DNA of 64,000 bases, taken from the IMG/VR virus record IMGVR_UViG_3300046507_000667, positions 124,001 to 188,000 of that record; one strand, 5' to 3'. Both the position numbers and the translations under genes were made by a program. This document shows, piece by piece, positions 5,996 through 63,965 of this stretch (positions are counted from its first letter, which is position 1; each line of letters begins with the position of its first letter). The notes below the pieces were generated by a model, which saw nothing but the letters and a program-made list of their open reading frames with translations, did not search any database and was not told the DNA's origin.

Positions 5996-6027
5996 TATTT
6001 TCACCATATAAATATCAAAACTACATT

Positions 6028-6349
6028 TTTAAAACCCTAGGGAGAAAAATCGTGATTTAATATTTTAATAGTACACTCACTATCACAAACTCAACTCCTT
6101 CAGATTTCCACTATGAGTAAGTCTCTCATATTTTCCGTAACCTAATAATGAAATATAAGCTAGAATCGCATCTATCCAGTTTAAAACCCTAGGGAGAAAA
6201 TTAGGTAGATATATTTCAATAGAGAAATTTTCTTGGGAAGGTAAGTCCTTGGGAAAACGTATAATCTGAAAGGTTGAGTAAAATATATTGTGGGTAATTT
6301 TATGCTATAAAAATATCGAATTTGATTTTTTAAAACCCTAGGGAGAAAA
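6028..6349. repeat. Three perfect 21-bp direct repeats TTTAAAACCCTAGGGAGAAAA (candidate iterons)
   Basis: Copies at 6028-6048, 6180-6200 and 6329-6349 in a 450-bp intergenic region; palindromic CCCTAGGG core. Confidence 0.85.
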
Positions 6350-6448
6350 ATAGGAGAATGATATTTTAATGGGAAATTGTATAGAATTAGTTTAATAGAG
6401 ATTTTGAATTAGAAACTTTTTACTGAAACTTCAAGGGAAAAATATATT

Positions 6449-45444: not shown

Positions 45445-45489
45445 ATATACCTTCTTATAGATGCCATAAATTTAAAAAAAAGAATCGGT

Positions 45490-45523
45490 AAAAAAAAAAA
45501 GATCCCTCCTGCAGAGAGGGATC
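45490..45523 (-). terminator. Intrinsic terminator
   Basis: GATCCCTC-7nt-GAGGGATC followed by T11 on minus strand. Confidence 0.8.
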
Positions 45524-45664
45524 GAAAAATTCCGCGCTCGGATTAGCTCACAAGTCTGGAATTAAGGAAAACTAGCACAAAGCACTTATCTATATTGCGA
45601 GATATAGATGAGTACTTTATGAGTAACAACCTATAAGGAATATTGCTATTCTCTATAGGTTGTC
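45490..45664 (-). ncRNA. Candidate ~175-nt early small RNA
   Basis: Early promoter, two long hairpins, a UUUUCCUUAAUU single-stranded segment, terminator with U11; no ORF with RBS. Confidence 0.6.
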
Positions 45665-45679
45665 ATGAAAATAATATAT
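45664..45679 (-). promoter_or_regulatory. Early promoter ATATATTAT-N5-TG
   Basis: ATATATTAT tttca TG. Confidence 0.7.
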
Positions 45680-54944: not shown

Positions 54945-55664
54945 ATGATCAACATTAACACTCTGGTTAACCATGTGAAAGCTCGTCTAGGTACACATGT
55001 CCGTCATCTAGAAATGGATGATGAAGCAATCATTAACTGTTTACAGCAAGAAACCCTTCCTACGCTTAGCATTTTCTTCCCTTATTACTGTCAGTATCTA
55101 CTGAATCTAAAGGAAGCAGAAGTGCAACCTGGAATGAATACATATTTCTTACCTACAGAGATTGAAGACTTCTCTGTAATGGGAGTTGAAGGTTTCTTAC
55201 CAGCTTATCGTGGATTAGCTTCACAGTCTTATTTCTTTGCACCAATGGGTAGTGATTTACAATCTATTATGGGTGCATTGAATAGTACTAAGCTTGCTAA
55301 TACACTGGCTTCAGCTATTATTAATCCATCAACATTTACTTGGATGCCACCTAATATGGTTAGACTTTCATCTAACTATAGTATGGAACAAGTAATCTTT
55401 TGTCTTAGAACTACTCATAAGAAAGATTTCTCTACATTTCCATATGGTGCAATGGAGACAATCAAGAAGTTAGCTCTATATGATGTAGCAATGGATATTT
55501 ATAGTATTCGAAAGCACTTTGCTCAAATTAATACTATCTTTGCTCAGATTAATCTTGATATGGATTTCTTTAATAGTATTCCTGATAAACGTGATGATCT
55601 GGTAGAAAGGCTGCGTAAAGAACAGCTTAAGTATAGCAACGCCAAAAAAATTTATATTTATTAA
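54945..55664 (+). CDS. Putative neck/head-completion protein (T4 gp13-like)
   Basis: LVNHVKARLG..LEMDDEAI N-terminus; late promoter. Confidence 0.55.
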   Translation: MININTLVNHVKARLGTHVRHLEMDDEAIINCLQQETLPTLSIFFPYYCQYLLNLKEAEVQPGMNTYFLPTEIEDFSVMGVEGFLPAYRGLASQSYFFAPMGSDLQSIMGALNSTKLANTLASAIINPSTFTWMPPNMVRLSSNYSMEQVIFCLRTTHKKDFSTFPYGAMETIKKLALYDVAMDIYSIRKHFAQINTIFAQINLDMDFFNSIPDKRDDLVERLRKEQLKYSNAKKIYIY

Positions 55665-55671
55665 AAATTAT

Positions 55672-55701
55672 CCCCTATACCTTCTTTTGAGGGTATAGGG
55701 G
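55672..55701. terminator. CCC(T/C)ATAC-family hairpin, bidirectional
   Basis: Between convergent genes. Confidence 0.75.
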
Positions 55702-55707
55702 TTTAAT

Positions 55708-56022
55708 TTAATAAGTCATAGTCAAATATGTCTTTCCATCTTTGAAATTCCAGAAGTAACGCAACGGGTCGGCATTAATATTGGAGCAATAACGAATAAA
55801 AACAGAAGGTGCCATTCTTAGATTTTTACCATCAATAGCATATGGTAATTTATATAAAATCAAATAATCTAATGAGCGCTTTGGAGGATTTGTAATAGTA
55901 CAACCAGCCACATCTGTATCATAGGTGCATGTACATGATCGTTGATTTGTATCTACATCTGCTGCAAAGGATGAGCCACTAAAAGCGAGAGACACAATAA
56001 GCGATAAGAGAAATTTTTTCAT
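55708..56022 (-). CDS. Small exported protein (signal peptide, four Cys)
   Basis: MKKFLLSLIVSLAFSGSSFA signal peptide. Confidence 0.7.
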   Translation of the reverse strand: MKKFLLSLIVSLAFSGSSFAADVDTNQRSCTCTYDTDVAGCTITNPPKRSLDYLILYKLPYAIDGKNLRMAPSVFIRYCSNINADPLRYFWNFKDGKTYLTMTY

Positions 56023-56160
56023 GATTATTATAGGTAATTATTATTAAAAAAAAAGAGATACAAAGGATAGAAATCGCATCACCATTTTTGACTTTATTAA
56101 GTCATTAATGGCAATGCGATCTCGGAACTTCGTTTCAGACTCTCTAACTAATAAGACAGA

Positions 56161-56493
56161 TTAATTTGCTGTCTTATTTTTGATGGTGGTACGACGTCGC
56201 AAATAATTGCTTCGCTTAGGACCATAACCAGCATAGTCGGTATCTCGTGACGAGTGACTGACAGCGCTGTTATGTCCACCTGCCATTGCCACAGATTGGT
56301 CAAAACCGAAATTACCGTTAAACGTATCTTGATGCAATGCTTTGATGCTATCAACGACACGCTGAATAGATGGGGTTTGCTGCTCTACTTCAAAGATATC
56401 CTGCCTGCTCTTTACGCTGTTTTGTTCAGCTGTCGCTACTACCGTTGCGTTGGTGCCGAATACTGCATTAAGAATGCGGTCTTTGAAAGACAT
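56161..56493 (-). CDS. Hypothetical protein embedded in structured RNA
   Basis: 110 aa, GAGGT RBS, about 45% GC by hand count. Confidence 0.55.
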   Translation of the reverse strand: MSFKDRILNAVFGTNATVVATAEQNSVKSRQDIFEVEQQTPSIQRVVDSIKALHQDTFNGNFGFDQSVAMAGGHNSAVSHSSRDTDYAGYGPKRSNYLRRRTTIKNKTAN

Positions 56494-56707
56494 GATTAAA
56501 TACCTCTAGAATGGCTCTGACGCTCTCCCAGTACTACCCACATCAGTGCCCATACAGTTATATATTTGACTACTTTTACCTGCAATACCATTGTGATGGT
56601 ATGAATTTTTGCGAGTTGGTTTTACATAATGGTAAAGCTTAATATTTTAATACATCTGTCTTATAGTGTTACACGCTTTAAATTCTCCTATAATGCGATT
56701 ACTTACT

Positions 56708-56723
56708 CATAGATATAATATAT
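56708..56723 (-). promoter_or_regulatory. Early promoter ATATATTAT-N5-TG
   Basis: ATATATTAT atcta TG. Confidence 0.7.
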
Positions 56724-56731
56724 ACTTATTA

Positions 56732-56864
56732 ATGTAGCAGGTTCGATTGCTTTAAAAGTCCCCCTATCAGTACAACGCAGTATCACTTAGGGGACGACCT
56801 TTATGATAGTCTTTCTGCATCTGATAGGGGAATGAAATTCAAAGCTCACTTACCTTTGCTACAT
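56732..56864 (-). ncRNA. Candidate ~130-nt rod-shaped ncRNA
   Basis: Nested stems AUGUAGCA/UGCUACAU, GCUUU/AAAGC, CCCCUAUCAG/CUGAUAGGGG, UGCAG/CUGCG, UAUCA/UGAUA; 5' end coincides with an early promoter. Confidence 0.6.
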
Positions 56865-56877
56865 CAAAATAATATAT
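56862..56877 (-). promoter_or_regulatory. Early promoter ATATATTAT-N5-TG
   Basis: ATATATTAT tttga TG. Confidence 0.7.
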
Positions 56878-56883
56878 TTGCAT

Positions 56884-59340
56884 TTATACCACAGTTACAT
56901 TTGCTACAGAGTCACCTTCTTCTAGTGTGATTAGACGATTTCCCTTAGCTTGACGGCTAAGTGAACTAAGTAGGCTATTATCTAGCTTAACTGACTTATT
57001 ATTGGCAGAATCAACAATAACTGATTGACCCTCAGTCACGATCTTACCTGCAATAAGATTGTCACCCTTATTTAGAGTTGCAATCTTTACAAGACCACCA
57101 CGACCACCATCACGACGACGATAAGCTACTTCAGTAAGTGCAACTGCTTTACCTTTACCTTGTGCTGTAACAATGACTGCTGCAGCATTTTCTGTAGCTG
57201 ATTCTGGTACAATATCCATTGAAACAACAACTTCACCTTCCCTCAATAGACAACGACCACGACCACTAGTAGGACGAAGCATTAGTTCAATATCACGTCC
57301 AGTTAACATCTTCTGGCATCGACCTTCTGAAGTAGTTACTAGTACAGTATCTTCTTCTGAATCTGAAAATGCTACTGCAACTAGATAATCACCTTCATTA
57401 ATCTTAATGGCAATATTACCACCCTTCATCCTACGTTCAGCTTTAAGATCAGTGATAGCTACACGCTTCATAAGAGAATCTGCAGTAATGAATACCACAG
57501 TCTCATTAGGATTGACCGGTTCTTTGATCTTCAAGACCGCAACCACAGCTTGACTACCGATATCTTCAATGGCATTACTAATATGCTTATGCCATAGATT
57601 CATCTGATAACCCTTTACATTGATCACCTTACCAGTATCCGTGAATACTAGAAGATCATCATGGCTATTTACAGTAAAGGTCTGCTCAAGCACCTTATTG
57701 TACTTTGGATCAATTACAGATTTACCCTTTCCTCCTCGAACAGCATAATCCTTCATTTCAGCTACTGGACGAGCATATACATACTTGTCCTTAGAAATAG
57801 CTACAAATAGATCTTCACTTTCAATAACATCACGGACATCAAAATCTCCGCCCTTATAGTTATTGGTAAGCTCAGTACGACGTTCTGTAGCAAACTTCTT
57901 AGCAATGTCAGTAAGCTGCTCTTTAATGATATCTAGAATCCGTTTTTCAGAAGATAGGATATCAACTCGGTTCTGTACTTCAATTTCAAGATTCTTAATT
58001 TCTTCCTTAAGCTTACCAACTTCAGTTGCCGAAATCTGATAAAGCTTAATATTAACAATATACTTTGCTTCTTTTTCAGTTAGATTAGCAAGTGCAGCAA
58101 CCTTTTGAATTGCATCTGCTTCACCTGTGGATTTCTTAATAAGATCAATAACCTTATCAATCATTCCCTGAATCTTTAACAAAGCACGACGGAAGAACAG
58201 AGTTTCTGTATACTTTGCAATCTCATAAGCATACTTACGTTGTAGAGTCTTGACCCGGAATTCGGTCCAGTGAGCTACAATCTGCTTAATATCAATATTG
58301 GCGGCTAGTTCTCCATCCTTCAACACATTACAGTTGTATGCAATATGATTACGAAGTTGAGTATGCTCAAGAAGCATATTCTGAAGTACTTCACAGGATA
58401 CATCTTTCTTAGGCCAAATTACCAGATTAACTTGTTGCTTCTTATCTGAATAATCATCCATATCTCCAACATATGCTTCTAGAAGACCAGGAGCCTTTGA
58501 CTTTGGATCAGGTTTACATAGAGAAGTAATCTGCTCCATAATAGCATTCGTAGTAACCTTATAAGGTAGATCCTTAACTACTAGTGCATCCTTACCACCA
58601 ATCTTTTCAAATTCAATACGTGATTGAATCCGAATGATACCTCGACCAGCTTTATAAATAGCTGGAAGATCAGCTTCATTAAGAATAATACCACCTGATG
58701 GAAAGTCAGGCCGGAAATTCTTAATTAGATCATCATGCTTGATATCTGGATTGGTAATGTACTTCTTTGTAATTTCACAAATATCCTGAACTCGATGAGG
58801 AAGAATATTTGTAGCAAACCCTGATGCAATACCAATTACACCAAGATTAAGAATCAATGGAAATGCAGATGGTAGATACTCTGGTTCTTGCATTGAAGCA
58901 TCATAGTTATCCTTAAAAGGAATATATGCTTCATTCAAATCACCAAGCAAAGTTTCACGAGAAAACTTTGAAAGACGAAGCTCAAGATATCGCATTGCTG
59001 CTTGACGATCACCTGAGATCTTACCATTATTACCTTCACTGTCTAGCAGTGGATTCAGACGGGTAAATGTCTGAGAGAGACCAACCATTGTGTCATAAAT
59101 TGACAAGTCACCATGAGGGTGATAATTTGCCATTACCTGACCAACGAACTTTGCAGCCTTCTTATATTTAAGTGCTGCAAGCTTCTCTTCATGAATAGCG
59201 TATAGAATACGACGGACTACAGGAGTTGCCGCATCTTCAATGGAAGGAATTGCTCGTGCTTTAACAGTTGCAACACCAAACTCAGACATTTTCTCGTTGA
59301 AAATATCTTCAATATCCATTCCTACAATAGCATCAGACAT
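56884..59340 (-). CDS. gyrA: DNA gyrase/type IIA topoisomerase subunit A
   Basis: RRILY, YHPHGD, AAMRY active-site Tyr, PDFPSGG, GyrA-box-like VRGGKG, beta-pinwheel repeats. Confidence 0.93.
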   Translation of the reverse strand: MSDAIVGMDIEDIFNEKMSEFGVATVKARAIPSIEDAATPVVRRILYAIHEEKLAALKYKKAAKFVGQVMANYHPHGDLSIYDTMVGLSQTFTRLNPLLDSEGNNGKISGDRQAAMRYLELRLSKFSRETLLGDLNEAYIPFKDNYDASMQEPEYLPSAFPLILNLGVIGIASGFATNILPHRVQDICEITKKYITNPDIKHDDLIKNFRPDFPSGGIILNEADLPAIYKAGRGIIRIQSRIEFEKIGGKDALVVKDLPYKVTTNAIMEQITSLCKPDPKSKAPGLLEAYVGDMDDYSDKKQQVNLVIWPKKDVSCEVLQNMLLEHTQLRNHIAYNCNVLKDGELAANIDIKQIVAHWTEFRVKTLQRKYAYEIAKYTETLFFRRALLKIQGMIDKVIDLIKKSTGEADAIQKVAALANLTEKEAKYIVNIKLYQISATEVGKLKEEIKNLEIEVQNRVDILSSEKRILDIIKEQLTDIAKKFATERRTELTNNYKGGDFDVRDVIESEDLFVAISKDKYVYARPVAEMKDYAVRGGKGKSVIDPKYNKVLEQTFTVNSHDDLLVFTDTGKVINVKGYQMNLWHKHISNAIEDIGSQAVVAVLKIKEPVNPNETVVFITADSLMKRVAITDLKAERRMKGGNIAIKINEGDYLVAVAFSDSEEDTVLVTTSEGRCQKMLTGRDIELMLRPTSGRGRCLLREGEVVVSMDIVPESATENAAAVIVTAQGKGKAVALTEVAYRRRDGGRGGLVKIATLNKGDNLIAGKIVTEGQSVIVDSANNKSVKLDNSLLSSLSRQAKGNRLITLEEGDSVANVTVV

Positions 59341-59406: not shown

Positions 59407-59913
59407 TTATGAAATGTGATCAGGAAAATCTTGAGCAAGTTTATTAAGCATATCGTTGAAATCACCAATTACCAAAGTACCTGAGAATGCAAGCATCAAA
59501 TTAACAGGAAGCTTAAAGTCTTCAATAATCCATCCTTTATGATCAACCAATGGACGTGAATCAGATTGAACTAGAATGTTATTATTAGCTTGCATGCGCT
59601 TCATATAAGTCTTCTCAAAGCCCTTGGAATAACCATAGACTTTCTTACCAAGACCAAATGCATAAGCATATTCCCATACTGTACCTGAATCTGGCTCAGT
59701 ACCACGGAAGTCAGATAGGTCAGCGATAATTACATTTGCTGCATGAATCTGAGCTAGATTAGCTTGATAAATCTCTTGTGCATCAATAAGGATTGCATCA
59801 AGAGGATGAAGAAGATCAATATTACGATTAGCTGCAATAAGCTTTCGTTCTTGTGCTTGACGACGAGCATTAGGAGCAAATACACCTGGACCTGCATCAT
59901 ATACTTTAAGCAT
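59407..59913 (-). CDS. Nucleoside 2-deoxyribosyltransferase family protein
   Basis: YDAGPGVF, DSGTVWEYAYAFGLGK and NLML motifs. Confidence 0.85.
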   Translation of the reverse strand: MLKVYDAGPGVFAPNARRQAQERKLIAANRNIDLLHPLDAILIDAQEIYQANLAQIHAANVIIADLSDFRGTEPDSGTVWEYAYAFGLGKKVYGYSKGFEKTYMKRMQANNNILVQSDSRPLVDHKGWIIEDFKLPVNLMLAFSGTLVIGDFNDMLNKLAQDFPDHIS

Positions 59914-60451: not shown

Positions 60452-60471
60452 TGTATACTCTTTAGAAAGAC

Positions 60472-60499
60472 TCCCTATACTCTTTTCAGAGTATAGGGA
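60472..60499. terminator. CCC(T/C)ATAC-family hairpin
   Basis: Perfect 12-bp stem after the gyrB stop. Confidence 0.75.
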
Positions 60500-60506
60500 A
60501 TTCATA

Positions 60507-61577
60507 TTACTCTAGAACATCACTTGTATCAGTGCTATTAAAGATATTGATTAGGAATTCCTTACGGAACTCTGCATCTTTGCCCATGAATCGCTTCATA
60601 GTGTCTTTCATATCTTTGCCTGGAAGTACTTGGATAAGTTGACGACGCTCAGGATCAAGAGTCGAGTTCCAAATATCTTCAGCAGAAGCTTCTCCCCATC
60701 CCTTGAATCGTGTCACAATAACAGACTTCTTGACATGATCTAGGAGGTTATTGAATACTTCAAAGTATGAGTCACCTTCGATCTGCTTGCCACGGCTTGT
60801 TGTTTCAAAGCTATAGTTTGCAATTTCAGCTAGTGCTTCATAGAGATCTGATACATCTTGTACAAATTGACCACCATCGACATTGACAATACAAACGAAA
60901 TCTTCTTGGATTGCTCCCTTATAGAATCCGATAATATTTACATTGTCGCCAGTAGTTTCAGTTACTTCGATACGATCACCAAAATCAATCTCACCACCTT
61001 CGGCATCGAAGTTTTGTACAAAGACTGATTCAAAGATACGTGGATTGATATTGTACTTCTTTGCAGCTAGTTTAAGAGCATGCAGATAGTTACGAATTTT
61101 TCCAATTACCTTTTCTTTTTCAGACTTCTTAGAAACTTCCTTTTCATCTACAGTAAATTTGAATGAACTTTCAATCTCATTAACGAGATATGCATTCAAG
61201 TCTTTCTCATTACGTAGATAAGATAGCTTGTGACCATCTTTAATTACCCGATAAAGAGGTGATACTGCAATATACAGACGACCTGCTTCAATCAATGGTG
61301 CAGTAAGTTCACCGAACATGGTTGTTGCAAGCATTTCGATGTGCTTACCATCGGAGTCTGCATCGGCAAGGATGATGATTTTGTTGAACTTGAGCTTTTC
61401 AAGATTAAAGCTACTACCAGTATCACACTTAAGGATAGTAACAATATCGTCAATTTCATCATTATTTCGCGCTTTATGCGGTTCAAGTCCGAAGACATTT
61501 TTCGGCTTTCCTTTCAGTTTATATACTGCCTGAAAACGCTTATCACGAGCATCCTTTACTGTACCGCCAGCCGAATC
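60507..61577 (-). CDS. gyrB: DNA gyrase subunit B, exon 2 (TOPRIM)
   Basis: DSAGG, LKGKPKN, DADSDG and RFKGWGE motifs; spliced product 802 aa. Confidence 0.92.
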   Translation of the reverse strand, partial: DSAGGTVKDARDKRFQAVYKLKGKPKNVFGLEPHKARNNDEIDDIVTILKCDTGSSFNLEKLKFNKIIILADADSDGKHIEMLATTMFGELTAPLIEAGRLYIAVSPLYRVIKDGHKLSYLRNEKDLNAYLVNEIESSFKFTVDEKEVSKKSEKEKVIGKIRNYLHALKLAAKKYNINPRIFESVFVQNFDAEGGEIDFGDRIEVTETTGDNVNIIGFYKGAIQEDFVCIVNVDGGQFVQDVSDLYEALAEIANYSFETTSRGKQIEGDSYFEVFNNLLDHVKKSVIVTRFKGWGEASAEDIWNSTLDPERRQLIQVLPGKDMKDTMKRFMGKDAEFRKEFLINIFNSTDTSDVLE

Positions 61578-61620
61578 CATATGTTAACCCTAGTATCGTT
61601 ATTACTAAAGTATGTATGAT

Positions 61621-62364
61621 TTAAATTTCTAAATCAATAATATCCCGCTCATATAATTGCTTAATGATAAAAGCAGATGTCATCATTCCATGTAGAGAAG
61701 GAACTCGAATTACTTCAATTCCATGCTCTTTGCAAAGTTTAAACTTAGTTTTGTCTCTATTCATTGTCTTTGGAAATTCAGCTTCTCTTCCTTGCTTGGA
61801 AATATAATGCTGTTCACCATCACATTCAATAGCTAAGTTGTACTCTGGTAGGAAGAAATCAATCCTAAGACCAAATTCTAGCTTAAGCCAGTCAAAAGTC
61901 TTTTCTTCTTCATATACAATTTCAACTTCATCCAGTACTTCTTTAACTGCAATTGAAGTCTTTGATTTAGTTTGATTACATGGACACCTAGTACCATTAT
62001 GAAATAAATCAGGACGAGTTTTCCAATCCTTTCCACAGGTCTTATGTCTAAGTAATACATGAGTTTTGTTATTCACATAGCTACTAATTAAAGTATATTC
62101 ATTTCCTGTCAAATCTTTTAGCTTTTGACTAAATTCTTCAGCAGTATAACTCCATGATCTATGTGTAGCACACTTGGGACAATTATTCGGTTTTGGTTTA
62201 AGAAAATCATAAGGAGACGTGGTTCCCCACTCATGCCCACACTTATTGTGTTTGAGCATAATAGGATCATGATTCCGAATATACTGTCCTAGAACTGTAT
62301 ACTCTTTACCATATCGATCGCTAACTCGTTTACAAAATTCATCATGTGTAAGTTGTTTTGGCAT
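61621..62364 (-). CDS. Intron-encoded homing endonuclease (Zn-ribbon repeats plus Vsr-like/EDxHD nuclease)
   Basis: Two H..CG..W..CP repeats; IDFFLP..IECDGEQHY. Confidence 0.85.
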   Translation of the reverse strand: MPKQLTHDEFCKRVSDRYGKEYTVLGQYIRNHDPIMLKHNKCGHEWGTTSPYDFLKPKPNNCPKCATHRSWSYTAEEFSQKLKDLTGNEYTLISSYVNNKTHVLLRHKTCGKDWKTRPDLFHNGTRCPCNQTKSKTSIAVKEVLDEVEIVYEEEKTFDWLKLEFGLRIDFFLPEYNLAIECDGEQHYISKQGREAEFPKTMNRDKTKFKLCKEHGIEVIRVPSLHGMMTSAFIIKQLYERDIIDLEI

Positions 62365-62398: not shown

Positions 62399-62627
62399 AC
62401 ACAATCACCCTCTACCGATACATATCTCATGCTTTCACATGAGTTCAGATCATATCTTCATACTTAGTTTCAAGTATGTCTCCCGTTTCCCCTGCACTTG
62501 CAGAGTACGCCTTATGGCTGATCGTTGAACGTTCCTTTTTCAAGGCTTCGCTGCTGATTGTCCTCATCTTTACATGTTAGGAGTTTCCAGCAATTAGAGA
62601 GATTTAATGAGAGCAACTCGGCAGTTT

Positions 62628-63965
62628 ACCCTCAACGAGATATAGCTCTGTACGTACACCGTCTTTTTCTTGACAATCTACGAACTTTGAGATATTGGAA
62701 AGTGACGTTACAAATGAACCACTTTCTTTCTTCACATTCTCAAGAGCACGTTTCTGTGCTAGACGAGACTTAGCTGAAAGAGCAAACTTAGTCGCAAGGA
62801 TTTTCATTTCCTTTGGACTATTATTCATCCACTCATCTAGCTTTGCATTTGTATACGACAATACATGGCCCGCTACATCAGTATTGACAAGCTTCTGTTT
62901 AGTCTGTGATGAATATTTCGGATTGAATACGAATACTGATACTACTGCTTCAAGACCAACGAATACATCTTCATTGTCAATCTTTTCTTTCGTAAGATTC
63001 TTTTCACGAACGAATGCAGTTACTTTCTGACTCAATGACCGTTTGAAACCAGTCACATGAGTACCACCTTCAGTAGTCTTAATAGTATTGGTAAATGACG
63101 TAATATTGTCACTTGCAAAACTATCATTCCAAGTTAAAGCAATTTCAATCTTAGTATCATTAATAACTTCTGAGGCAAGAGATACAGGAGCAATGATACC
63201 TTTCTTACCTACTGCTTCGGCTAGGAAGTCAGCTACACCTTCCTTGAAGTTATGAATAATCGGCTTTTCTTGATGACAGCTATGATATTCAACTGTCAAG
63301 CCAGAATTAAGTTGTGCAACTTCACGGAGGAATTTGACAATTTCTTCTTCAATAGGTAAAGTACCTTCCTCAAAGAATTGAGGATTGAATTGGAAGTTGA
63401 CACGAGTTGAAGACTTCTTATAACGCTTATCAGCTGGTAAAGTAACATTTTTCGATACCTTTACCTTCTGCTCATAACCATTATTGAAGGTAATTTCACC
63501 CTTATCAGTTCCTCGTTGTGCTTCTACATAAAAGATTGCTGAAAGAGCATTAACACATGACGCACCAACACCATTTAGACCAGTAGAATATACTGTCTTC
63601 TTTTCAAAGTTACGACCAGCATGGAGCTTGCCAAAAATCTTTGATAGGGTATTGGAACCATCATCTTGCTTATCAAATGGAACACCTCGGCCATTATCAT
63701 AGACAGAGAAGCTATAGTCATCATGCCGTGTAACAATGATAGCCGTTGCAAAACCTGCAAGAAATTCATCAACTGAGTTATTGATGATTTCTCGAATAGC
63801 TGTCAAATAACCTGCAGAGTCATTTGGACCAATATACATCTGTGGACGTACTTGGACACATTCCGGAAATGGAAGTTCTTTAATGTCCTTACCAGTATAG
63901 TCATTTGCTACTTTAGTAGCTGCTGCAGCAATAGCCGTTTTTTCTACAGACTTAGTACGAGCCAT
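62628..63965 (-). CDS. gyrB: DNA gyrase subunit B, exon 1 (GHKL ATPase)
   Basis: RPQMYIG, EIINNSVDE, DNGRGVP, GLNGVGAS, EGGTH and LYLVEG motifs. Confidence 0.92.

What the first reader, a model, noticed from the sequence alone, without database searches (positions are those of the whole stretch)
56732..56877. Rod-shaped ~130-nt ncRNA with its own early promoter, downstream of gyrA
Seen: the 5' end predicted from the promoter pairs with the 3' end (GUAGCA/UGCUAC). Five nested stems separated by internal loops form one long rod, including a 10-bp CCCCUAUCAG/CUGAUAGGGG helix, and there is no ORF. Established: 6S RNA is a rod with a central bubble that sequesters RNA polymerase. Inference: a decoy RNA (6S-like mimic against host RNAP, or a sponge for a defence protein). 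It lacks SRP, tRNA and tmRNA signatures.
Basis: partly seen in the sequence, partly recalled or inferred. Interest (0 to 1): 0.62.

Follow-up and report, generated by a model that had tools for sequence, protein, structure and literature searches.

The report
Small early hairpin RNA after gyrA
Just after the gyrase A gene of an uncultured 249-kb soil phage lies a small conserved non-coding RNA unit with its own early promoter; it folds into one long hairpin built around the phage's usual transcription stop signal, and nothing supports the proposed 6S-like mimicry.

Summary
The window comes from a 249-kb jumbo phage related to AR9 and phiR1-37, with split RNA polymerase genes. Its genes are preceded by the virion-polymerase early promoter TATATTAT-(6N)-G. 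There are 11 copies in the window, all on the minus strand, against 0.8 expected.

Two copies sit in the 390-nt gap after gyrA. P1 starts at G56862 and P2 at G56708. The 129 nt between them (56862 to 56734, minus strand) fold from the first transcribed base into one rod (-48.8 kcal/mol, z -6.9, 45 pairs).

A diverged relative (L061) keeps P1, a 107-nt rod and P2. Its rod is only about 55% identical in sequence but shows compensatory pair changes. All wobble pairs lie on the gene-sense strand.

The rod's core helix and U-rich tail belong to the phage's roughly 40-copy terminator family. Relatives carry a plain terminator at this exact spot.

Best reading: a stand-alone small early RNA gene built on the gyrA terminator. 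Its trans function is unknown.

It fails the 6S tests, with no Rfam match and no central bubble. No RNA-seq data exist, so expression and the RNA's 3' end are unproven.

The parts
56884..59340 (-). gyrA (818 aa), the upstream gene. Its last codons carry the upstream GTA element of P1 (56896-56898).
   Evidence: Pfam DNA_topoisoIV 3e-110 plus DNA_gyraseA_C. GTA-N19-TATATTAT spacing seen in many promoters of this genome and in phiR1-37.
56862..56876 (-). Early promoter P1: core TATATTAT (56876 to 56869), six bases, then predicted start G at 56862.
   Evidence: Motif enrichment. Identical to the AR9/phiR1-37 virion-RNAP early consensus with the start 6 nt after the core (PMC5312081). Conserved in L061. 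Flank score ranks 41 of 54.
56734..56862 (-). 129-nt rod RNA, nt 1-129 counted from the P1 start.
   Evidence: MFE -48.8 kcal/mol, z -6.92. 45 pairs, of which 4 are G.U pairs that exist only on this strand. The homologous 107-nt rod in L061 has z -6.53. Pair-by-pair comparison.
56852..56862 (-). 5' arm of terminal helices A/A' (nt 1-6 and 9-11). It pairs with 56734-56742.
   Evidence: C5-G125 in the reference becomes U5.G125 in haplotype B and U5-A103 in L061. Outer pairing beyond the core helix has p about 0.009 against shuffles.
56838..56848 (-). 5' arms of helix B (nt 15-17) and helix C (nt 18-25). They pair with 56744-56746 and 56749-56756.
   Evidence: The haplotype B change U15>C turns a U.G pair into C-G. 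Two one-sided, pair-keeping changes occur in helix C of L061.
56821..56832 (-). 5' arm of core helix D (nt 31-42, includes CCCCUAUCAG). It pairs with 56759-56770.
   Evidence: 12 pairs in both lineages, all standard in L061 and one a G.U wobble in the reference, with 7 two-sided changes if aligned without gaps, or at least 2 plus paired indels if gapped. The CCCTA...TAGGG stem belongs to the genome's terminator family.
56771..56820 (-). 50-nt apical insert (nt 43-92) that forms its own imperfect hairpin. It is only 27 nt in L061.
   Evidence: (z -1.9 alone). It is the only member of the hairpin family with a loop above 13 nt.
56754..56758 (-). CUUUU tail directly after helix D (nt 105-109), a terminator-type U-tract.
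   Evidence: The tail matches the family pattern G(A/G)nTTTTA. It is kept as CUUUUU in L061, where it is unpaired.
56708..56722 (-). Early promoter P2: core TATATTAT (56722 to 56715), predicted start G at 56708. It begins 11 nt after the rod.
   Evidence: Conserved in L061. Weak flanks, rank 51 of 54, because the rod's 3' arm occupies its upstream region.
56494..56707 (-). 214-nt leader from P2 to the next gene, unstructured. It contains a 26-nt block identical in L061.
   Evidence: z +1.09 for the 215 nt from the P2 start at 56708. Conserved block seen in the alignment and not repeated elsewhere in the genome.
56161..56493 (-). 110-aa early ORF with a conserved basic C-terminal tail and no known family.
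   Evidence: No Pfam or PHROG match. Only homologue outside this phage's own variants (99% identical) is 83% identical, on L061.

Best explanation
This is a stand-alone small early RNA gene wedged between gyrA and the next gene.

Shown:
- A full-consensus virion-RNA-polymerase early promoter (P1) sits 7 nt after the gyrA stop.
- The sequence from its predicted +1 (G56862) to nt 129 (56734) folds on the minus strand into one unbranched rod whose first base pairs with its last.
- A second early promoter (P2) follows within 11 nt.
- The whole P1-rod-P2 module is kept in a diverged lineage, with compensatory base-pair changes and low sequence identity.
- The rod's core (helix D plus the CUUUU tail) is a derivative of the phage's standard terminator hairpin. 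It sits where relatives have the plain gyrA terminator.

Inferred:
- The injected virion polymerase transcribes the rod in the first minutes of infection.
- The core helix and U-tract stop gyrase-operon transcripts and part of the P1 transcripts, giving an RNA of about 108 nt.
- Transcripts that pass the U-tract close the outer helices, so both ends are paired and protected from nucleases (about 129 nt).
- P2 restarts transcription for the downstream gene, which is therefore independent of P1.

The paired ends, unbranched shape and fast sequence drift with kept pairing point to an RNA that acts through its shape, by binding a protein, rather than through a long antisense match. The partner is unknown. 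It is not a 6S RNA.
For: Promoter:
- The motif is enriched and oriented with genes.
- It matches the experimentally mapped AR9/phiR1-37 early consensus and start point (PMC5312081; phiR1-37 sequence).
- The phage encodes split beta and beta' polymerase pieces.

Structure:
- z is -6.92.
- The outer helices beyond the terminator core are better than shuffles, p about 0.009.

Strand:
- All 4 G.U pairs in the reference and all 4 in L061 exist only on the gene-sense strand. The antisense folds are 5-8 kcal/mol weaker.

Conservation:
- L061 (gyrA C-terminus 95% aa identity, third codon positions 77%) keeps P1, a 107-nt rod (z -6.53) starting exactly at +1, and P2, while rod identity is about 55%.
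- Of 35 homologous pair positions, 14 are the same, 7 changed on one side and stayed paired, 8 changed on both sides and stayed paired, and 6 are lineage-specific.
- The change from C5-G125 through U5.G125 (haplotype B) to U5-A (L061) lies in the terminal helix, outside the terminator core.

Independence:
- Of 58 predicted early promoters, this is the only one followed by a dense ORF-free rod from +1. It is also the only terminator-family hairpin with an early promoter within 80 nt upstream.
- P2 makes the downstream gene independent of P1.

Terminator ancestry.

At least one further orphan early promoter with a structured RNA and terminator lies in the window, so small early RNAs may be a habit of this phage.
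Against: - There is no transcript evidence. No RNA run holds this phage, so the start, the 3' end and abundance are all predictions.
- Only two diverged lineages plus three near-identical haplotypes are available, too few for a formal covariation test. Most two-sided changes lie in helix D, which would also covary as a plain terminator.
- Within the population the rod carries 5 SNPs in 129 nt against about 1.1% in the flanks. One of them (G9>A) breaks a pair.
- P1's flanking positions score below the median for this genome's promoters.
- No terminator follows the full rod, so the 129-nt form needs processing or read-through.
- No partner protein, no target and no homologue in any RNA family were found.
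Confidence: 0.5

Rival explanations
1. Pure transcription punctuation. The rod is just the gyrA-operon terminator or insulator, perhaps also an RNase III-type processing and 3'-end protection hairpin. It has grown a large loop and extended arms. P1 is an incidental or redundant promoter whose short transcript has no role of its own.
For: - Relatives L006, L010, L056, L058 and phiR1-37 all have a plain CCCTAT-type terminator directly after gyrA, followed by an early promoter.
- Helix D and its tail fit the family of about 40 copies.
- The U-tract is kept in L061 although unpaired there.
- SNP density in the rod is high.
- AR9 transcripts end at predicted terminators (PMC5312081).
Against: - P1's core and its upstream GTA element are both conserved in L061.
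- The terminal helix starts at +1 in both lineages and covaries outside the terminator core.
- It is the only one of about 40 family hairpins with a 27-50-nt insert and extended arms.
- The phage encodes no RNase III or dsRNA-binding domain of its own; host RNase III cannot be tested.
Confidence: 0.22
2. Promoter-proximal attenuator or leader, like lambda pR'-tR' or N/nut. P1 transcripts stop at helix D and the U-tract unless a factor lets the polymerase read on into the 110-aa gene. That factor could be the 110-aa basic-tailed protein itself. In read-through RNA the rod would form a 5' cap that stabilises the mRNA.
For: - The order is promoter, then terminator-type hairpin, then gene.
- The helix starts at +1, the classic position for a 5'-terminal stabilising stem (own knowledge: ompA-type 5' hairpins).
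- The downstream protein has a conserved Arg/Lys-rich tail.
- AR9 has genes with more than one promoter (PMC5312081).
Against: - P2 sits between the rod and the gene and is conserved, so the gene does not need P1 read-through.
- The P2 leader is unstructured.
- No antitermination factor is known for these polymerases.
- The protein has no detectable family.
Confidence: 0.1
3. Base-pairing sRNA of the '3'-UTR type with its own promoter', DapZ-like. P1, partly inside the end of gyrA, makes an RNA of about 108 nt that shares the gyrA terminator. Its free 5' 30 nt act as a seed on a host or phage mRNA.
For: - Cut at the U-tract, the RNA leaves nt 1-30 largely single-stranded ahead of a terminator hairpin.
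- Nt 1-23 are nearly invariant between the reference and L061, while the rest is about 55% identical.
- The architecture matches type-I 3'-UTR sRNAs (own knowledge).
Against: - There is no complementary stretch above 12 nt anywhere in the phage genome, which is the chance level.
- The 'seed' is matched in cis by the conserved, covarying 3' arm just past the U-tract.
- The host is unknown, so host targets cannot be searched.
Confidence: 0.08
4. 6S-like mimic that sequesters host RNA polymerase.
For: Only the general rod shape with paired ends, and the fact that a phage with its own polymerases could profit from blocking the host enzyme.
Against: - No match to any Rfam family, 6S included, at E<=10.
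- Length is 107-129 nt rather than about 180 nt.
- The largest internal loop is about 6x6 nt, and in L061 it is largely closed by helix B, so there is no open-promoter-like bubble.
Confidence: 0.03
5. DNA-level element: a cruciform, a replication origin with tandem promoters, or a mobile inverted-repeat element.
For: - Tandem promoters lie next to replication genes and ahead of a long non-coding stretch.
- The rod folds better than shuffles as DNA too (z -3.05).
Against: - All 8 wobble pairs sit on one strand only.
- There is no turning point of cumulative GC skew near the site.
- It is single-copy in the genome, with no copies in relatives. No paralogous similarity exists outside the promoter cores.
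Confidence: 0.03

Closest known systems
AR9 / phiR1-37 virion-RNAP early transcription units (promoter AAATATATATTAT-(6N)-G, then a Rho-independent terminator)
   Same: The promoter core and start spacing are the same. The upstream GTA-N19 element is also seen in phiR1-37. The stems are the same kind of CCCTAT/ATAGGG terminator. The gene order matches phiR1-37 and the closer relatives: gyrA, terminator, promoter, small gene, ending at a reverse virion-protein gene.
   Different: Here an extra early promoter stands before the terminator. The terminator loop carries a 27-50-nt insert, and the flanks pair to extend it into a rod closed at +1. None of the relatives examined has this.
Short promoter-to-terminator phage transcripts: lambda oop RNA and the lambda pR'-tR' '6S' transcript (own knowledge); LUZ7 intergenic sRNA1/2 with one start and two alternative terminators (PMC9163698)
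   Same: A consensus promoter is followed within about 100-200 nt by a terminator with no ORF. A short and a long isoform from one start are possible.
   Different: There is no sequence or structural homology. Those RNAs are made by other polymerases: host RNAP for the lambda transcripts, and in LUZ7 an unnamed polymerase late in infection. Their ends are not paired into a single rod.
Type-I 3'-UTR-derived bacterial sRNAs such as DapZ and MicL (own knowledge)
   Same: The promoter is partly inside the end of the upstream ORF, the terminator is shared with that mRNA, and the 5' segment is conserved.
   Different: The conserved 5' segment here is paired in cis by a covarying arm beyond the U-tract. 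No target was found.
phiR1-37 intergenic small RNA misc_4 (61,640-61,936; PMC4848604)
   Same: It is the only experimentally seen intergenic non-coding RNA in the nearest characterised phage, and it also has no known function.
   Different: It lies at a different locus, next to an RNAP subunit gene. There is no early promoter motif on its strand and no similarity to this rod.
6S RNA (Rfam RF00013)
   Same: An irregular helix with paired 5' and 3' ends.
   Different: No model match, shorter, and no central bubble.
Adenovirus VA RNA I and other end-paired viral decoy RNAs (own knowledge)
   Same: A rod of about 110-160 nt with a terminal stem formed by both ends, made early and in its own transcription unit. 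This is a 'works like' analogy for the novel reading only.
   Different: It is eukaryotic, with no homology. No bacterial sensor that such an RNA would block has been identified here.

Membership tests
6S RNA | Match to the Rfam covariance models for 6S and its variants | tested here: not met
   No hit at the gathering threshold in the window. No 6S hit at E<=10 in 56400-57000.
6S RNA | RNA of about 180 nt with a large central bubble mimicking an open promoter | tested here: not met
   129 nt (107 nt in L061). The largest internal loop is about 6x6 nt and is closed by helix B in L061.
6S RNA | Binds sigma-70 holoenzyme and templates product RNA | not testable with these tools
   Needs biochemistry, and the host is unknown.
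AR9/phiR1-37-type virion-RNAP early transcription unit | Promoter core TATATTAT, six bases, G as start | tested here: met
   P1 at 56876-56862 and P2 at 56722-56708. Consensus from PMC5312081. Conserved in L061.
AR9/phiR1-37-type virion-RNAP early transcription unit | Phage encodes split multisubunit RNA polymerase | tested here: met
   Rpb2_6 hit in a 653-aa frame and Rpb1_2 hits in a 458-aa frame. Closest characterised phage by gyrA is phiR1-37.
AR9/phiR1-37-type virion-RNAP early transcription unit | Transcript present early, with 5' end at the predicted G | not testable with these tools
   No RNA run holds the sequence.
This phage's intrinsic-terminator hairpin family (CCCTA(T/A)AC...GT(A/T)TAGGG) | Stem opening with CCCTA and closing with TAGGG | tested here: met
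   Helix D is listed among 41 loci of the family.
This phage's intrinsic-terminator hairpin family (CCCTA(T/A)AC...GT(A/T)TAGGG) | T-rich tail of the type G(A/G)nTTTTA directly after the stem | tested here: met
   The tail GGGACTTTTAAAG fits the others. It is CUUUUU in L061.
This phage's intrinsic-terminator hairpin family (CCCTA(T/A)AC...GT(A/T)TAGGG) | Short loop (4-13 nt between perfect arms) | tested here: not met
   50 nt here and 27 nt in L061. It is unique in the family.
This phage's intrinsic-terminator hairpin family (CCCTA(T/A)AC...GT(A/T)TAGGG) | Lies a few to about 30 nt after a stop codon, with no promoter in between | tested here: not met
   It lies 55 nt after the gyrA stop, with P1 in between. 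It is the only case with an early promoter within 80 nt upstream. By position it is orthologous to the plain gyrA terminators of relatives.
Y RNA / Ro60 RNP | Rfam Y RNA or YrlA match and a TROVE (Ro60) protein in the genome | tested here: not met
   No Rfam hit. No TROVE domain in the phage. The host cannot be tested.
tRNA / tmRNA / SRP RNA | ARAGORN or Rfam detection | tested here: not met
Trans-acting base-pairing sRNA | Own promoter, terminator hairpin with U-tail, no ORF | tested here: met
Trans-acting base-pairing sRNA | Complementarity to a target mRNA | tested here: inconclusive
   The longest complement in the phage genome is 12 nt, which is chance level. The host genome is unknown.

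The most novel reading that the evidence does not exclude
The virion polymerase makes this rod within minutes of DNA entry. Its triphosphate 5' end and its 3' end are locked in a helix. It acts as a shape-based decoy or sponge, analogous to adenovirus VA RNA, for a host protein that senses or cuts structured or 5'-triphosphate RNA. That protein could be a defence sensor, RNase III/E or an RNA chaperone. This would be the first protein-sequestering early RNA of a jumbo phage, and it would have evolved from a terminator.
Probability: 0.12. Interest if true: 0.85.

Novelty: new member of a known kind. Interest (0 to 1): 0.48.

Why it matters
Small RNAs of lytic phages are poorly known. For the AR9/phiR1-37/phiKZ group only a handful of candidates exist, none with a function.

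This case offers a cleanly delimited candidate:
- a predicted start at single-base resolution,
- a conserved structure with compensatory changes,
- a visible evolutionary origin, as a standard terminator turned into a promoter-bearing, end-paired rod.

If it is expressed, it would show that the injected virion polymerase makes non-coding RNA as one of its first products. It would also give a defined RNA for pull-down of host or phage partners. If it is only punctuation, it still documents how terminators in these phages can be elaborated. It also shows that their CCCTAT-type stems are conserved across distant relatives, which hints at sequence-specific recognition during termination.

Tried and rejected
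Searches for homologues that found nothing useful:
- blastn and megablast of the region against 50,697 phage records: no match.
- The search for related loci with gyrA or the 110-aa protein alone in viral contigs: none.
- Model R1, built from the reference and haplotype B, found nothing in four related IMG/VR genomes, in the other relatives' loci, or as a second copy in its own genome.
- A metagenome scan for CCCCTATCAG-N40-60-CTGATAGGGG gave 10 hits. All were unrelated palindromic repeats of other organisms with different composition.
- A scan of viral contigs for the conserved 5' arm found nothing.
- The search with the gyrA C-terminal fragment found nothing.

Analyses that failed or were uninformative:
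- MAFFT plus RNAalifold misaligned the 3' arms and undercounted covariation. The model-made alignment mixed in antisense and spurious rows. I therefore compared pairs by hand-anchored helices in a script.
- Population SNPs alone do not decide anything: 5 sites, of which 1 lies in a loop, 3 are pair-keeping (two wobble, one improving) and 1 is pair-breaking.
- Two whole-genome fold scans timed out and were replaced by an intergenic scan.

Ideas tested and dropped:
- Antisense targets in the phage genome: at most 12 nt, chance level.
- Decayed-gene hypothesis for the 390-nt gap: no tblastn similarity to the relatives' genes at this position.
- Phage-encoded Ro60, RNase III or dsRBD partners: absent.
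- A recurring late-promoter motif in the P2 leader: the conserved block is unique.
- The protein atlas gave no lead for the 110-aa protein.
- The phiR1-37 misc_4 sRNA locus is not an analogue.

Limits of the data:
- Sequencing-run search: 8 rhizosphere DNA runs hold the sequence and none is RNA.
- The large representative-protein search, structure prediction and complex prediction were not used, because the claim concerns an RNA.

Full report
**What the window is.** The window is bases 124,001-188,000 of a complete 249,347-bp virus record with direct terminal repeats and 35% G+C. It was assembled from a rhizosphere metagenome. gyrA (56884-59340, minus strand) is a clear gyrase A gene. Its nearest characterised relative is Yersinia phage phiR1-37, at 38% identity. 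The genome encodes split beta-like and beta'-like RNA polymerase pieces. This is the hallmark of the phiKZ/AR9/phiR1-37 group, which carries a virion and a non-virion multisubunit polymerase (PMC5312081).

**The observation.**
- The 146-nt stretch folds far better than shuffles on both strands, and better on the minus strand: -51.9 kcal/mol, z -6.45, against -43.5, z -4.9.
- No Rfam family, tRNA or tmRNA matches.
- No credible ORF is present.

**The promoter.** An 8-mer, TATATTAT, dominates the upstream regions of this genome. It occurs in 46 upstream regions, oriented with the genes.
- With the downstream TG it occurs 11 times in the window, all on the minus strand, against 0.8 expected.
- The full consensus is gTaTTaA, about 14 nt, aaATATATTAT, five bases, TG.
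- This is the experimentally mapped early promoter of AR9, AAATATATATTAT-(6N)-G+1. It is read by the injected virion polymerase and shared by phiR1-37 (PMC5312081; phiR1-37 sequence).
- The 390-nt gap after gyrA holds two copies on the gene strand. P1 has its core at 56876-56869 and predicted start at G56862. P2 has its core at 56722-56715 and predicted start at G56708.
- P1 also has the upstream GTA element at the standard 19-nt spacing, inside the last codons of gyrA.
- Judged by flanking positions, P1 ranks 41st and P2 51st of 54.

**The RNA.** From G56862 to 56734 the minus strand gives a 129-nt RNA that folds into one unbranched rod of 45 pairs. The energy is -48.8 kcal/mol, z -6.92, with 0 of 200 shuffles as good.
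- The pairing outside the core helix is itself better than shuffled flanks, p about 0.009.
- All four G.U pairs exist only on this strand. The plus-strand fold has 38 pairs and is 8 kcal/mol weaker.
- Among 58 predicted early promoters in the genome, this is the only one followed by a dense, ORF-free rod from +1.

**A homologue, and covariation.** The element is single-copy. It has no match in phage records, in four related IMG/VR genomes or in other relatives' loci. The homologue turned up through the downstream 110-aa protein, which has an 83%-identical relative on a 2.2-kb soil contig, L061.
- In L061 the gyrA C-terminus is 95% identical in protein and 90.6% in DNA. Third codon positions are 77% identical.
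- L061 keeps the whole module: gyrA stop, P1 with its GTA element, a 107-nt rod that starts exactly at +1, six bases, then P2.
- Its rod was folded independently and gives -46.1 kcal/mol, z -6.53, against -40.9 on the antisense strand. Again all four G.U pairs are sense-only.
- Rod sequence identity is only about 55%, below the synonymous level.
- Of 35 homologous pair positions, 14 are unchanged, 7 changed on one side and still pair, 8 changed on both sides and still pair, and 6 are lineage-specific.
- Seven of the two-sided changes are in core helix D under an ungapped alignment. A gapped alignment gives at least two plus paired insertions and deletions.
- One two-sided change is in the terminal helix: C5-G125 in the reference, U5.G125 in haplotype B and U5-A103 in L061. 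This is a textbook path through a wobble intermediate.
- The one-sided changes in the outer helices A-C between the reference and L061 fall mostly on the 3' arm. Nt 1-23 are almost invariant.
- The apical part is the least constrained: 50 nt here, 27 nt in L061.
However, two lineages are too few for a formal test.

**Population variation.** Three haplotypes are seen in contigs and runs from other rhizosphere samples. The rod carries five variable sites:
- nt 5 C>U, which gives a wobble pair;
- nt 9 G>A, which breaks a pair in a 3-bp helix;
- nt 15 U>C, which improves a U.G pair to C-G;
- nt 71, in the apical loop;
- nt 73 C>U, which gives a wobble pair.

This density (3.9%) is higher than in the flanks (about 1.1%). 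It argues against strong constraint on the primary sequence and fits a structure-based role.

**The terminator inside.** The genome holds about 40 near-identical intergenic hairpins. They have the form CCCTA(T/A)AC...GT(A/T)TAGGG, perfect arms with 4-13 nt between them, and lie mostly 6-30 nt after stop codons. Their tails follow the pattern G(A/G)nTTTTA.
- Helix D of the rod (CCCCUAUCAG / CUGAUAGGGG) and its tail ACUUUUAAAG fit this family.
- It is the only member with a large insert in the loop, and the only one with an early promoter just upstream.
- Every relative examined has a plain hairpin of this type directly after gyrA, followed by an early promoter. This holds for L006, L010, L056, L058 and phiR1-37, where it is annotated as a Rho-independent terminator.
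- The rod therefore occupies the ancestral gyrA terminator position and is most simply derived from it. In the reference/L061 lineage a promoter was added in front, an insert grew in the loop and the flanks became complementary.
- The U-tract is kept in L061 although it is unpaired there. This suggests that the stop function is retained.

**Putting it together.** Three features are conserved together: P1, the full rod closed at +1, and P2.
- A plain terminator needs neither P1 nor the outer helices.
- A 5' leader for the next gene would not need P2.
- The one reading that uses all three is an independent small RNA unit. P1 makes it, the rod is the product and also stops transcription, and P2 restarts transcription for the next gene.
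- Two isoforms are likely: about 108 nt ending at the U-tract, with nt 1-30 mostly free, and about 129 nt with both ends paired. LUZ7 sRNA1/2 likewise share a start and use alternative terminators (PMC9163698).
- Paired ends are typical of stable protein-binding RNAs. Together with the fast sequence drift and kept pairing, I infer a shape-dependent function. This step is inference only.
- The 6S reading fails its testable criteria.
- A DNA-level role is unlikely. The wobble pairs sit on one strand only, there is no skew signal and there are no extra copies.
- No antisense target exists in the phage genome.
- The phage encodes no Ro60, RNase III or dsRBD partner.

**Context.**
- The stretch between gyrA and a conserved reverse-strand virion protein gene (54945-55664; PHROG 18911) is variable among relatives. 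This is typical of accessory early genes.
- The P2 leader (56494-56707; folded as 215 nt from the start at 56708) is unstructured, z +1.09.
- The 110-aa protein has no family and carries a conserved basic tail.
- The same window holds a second orphan early promoter (start at 45664, minus strand). It is followed by about 175 nt of four hairpins and a strong terminator, z -7.26. Two more candidates lie elsewhere in the genome. Small early RNAs may thus be a feature of this phage.

**Limits.**
- No RNA data exist for this phage, so expression, ends and abundance are untested.
- The host is unknown.
- Only two diverged lineages are known.

**Verdict.** The feature is real and conserved. It is best described as a new small early RNA gene built on the gyrA terminator, with unknown trans function. 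The 6S-like interpretation is not supported.

Noticed in passing
window 45485-45678 (minus strand): A second orphan early promoter (core 45671-45678, start G45664) is followed by about 175 nt with four hairpins, the first starting at +1. It ends in a strong terminator (9-bp GC-rich stem plus 11 U) about 45 nt before the next gene. MFE is -63.5 kcal/mol, z -7.26. It is a stronger textbook sRNA-gene candidate than the finding itself.
   Followed up: partly
genome 218156 (+) and 5789/5866 (+), outside the window (G000:C1): Further early promoters lack a nearby ORF. One is followed by a 23-bp near-perfect hairpin and a U-rich tail (z -5.3). A pair of promoters 77 nt apart opens a 744-nt ORF-free stretch, and the first transcript's 72-nt hairpin uses the second promoter core as its 3' arm.
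   Followed up: partly
whole genome, e.g. window 55672-55701 and 60471-60498; also L006, L010, L056, L058, L052, L060: About 40 intergenic hairpins share the stem sequence CCCTA(T/A)AC...GT(A/T)TAGGG, not just a shape. The same CCCTAT/ATAGGG stems serve as terminators in distant relatives, including phiR1-37. This hints at sequence-specific recognition in termination by these phage polymerases.
   Followed up: partly
window 62426-62653 (minus) and 61621-62364: gyrB is split by a group I intron (Rfam 77.8 bits) that carries a 247-aa ORF. The N-terminal gyrB part is 62604-63965 and the Toprim/C-terminal part is 60507-61580. phiR1-37 instead has an endonuclease-bearing interruption in gyrA.
   Followed up: no
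window 5996-6448: A 453-nt stretch has no ORF of 25 aa or more. It carries three copies of AAACCCTAGGGAGAAAA spaced about 150 nt apart. Tandem Repeats Finder does not call an array, so the units between them are diverged.
   Followed up: partly
window 56531-56570 (minus), inside the P2 leader: A block of about 26-30 nt (ATATAACTGTATGGGCACTGATGTGG) is identical in L061, although the surrounding leader is about 64% identical. It is unique in the genome. It contains an AUG that opens a 15-codon frame here, which the shorter L061 spacer leaves open into the main ORF. It could be an upstream ORF or a regulatory site.
   Followed up: partly
window 56040-56140 (minus): The gap after the 110-aa gene holds another long hairpin (17 bp with a nested 6-bp hairpin inside its loop, within a longer imperfect stem) followed by nine T. 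It is a non-family terminator, which makes the 110-aa gene a one-gene early unit.
   Followed up: no
window 55708-56493 versus L006, L010, L009, L052: The genes between gyrA and the conserved reverse-strand virion protein gene differ completely among relatives (110+104 aa here; 213+130 aa; 83 aa; 94+238+308 aa in phiR1-37). This is a variable island of small early genes of unknown function.
   Followed up: partly
window 55756-55795: A cluster of 7 SNPs within 40 nt separates this genome from all four laid runs. It lies in the C-terminal part of the 104-aa ORF, far above the local average.
   Followed up: no
genome 229286-229330 (minus), outside the window: One early promoter core sits in the loop of a 23-bp palindrome formed by its own upstream and initially transcribed sequences.
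   Followed up: no
window 59407-59913 (minus): A nucleoside 2-deoxyribosyltransferase gene lies immediately upstream of gyrA, and one also lies near gyrA in L010. This may relate to modified-base DNA, since phiR1-37 and AR9 contain deoxyuridine (PMC5312081).
   Followed up: no
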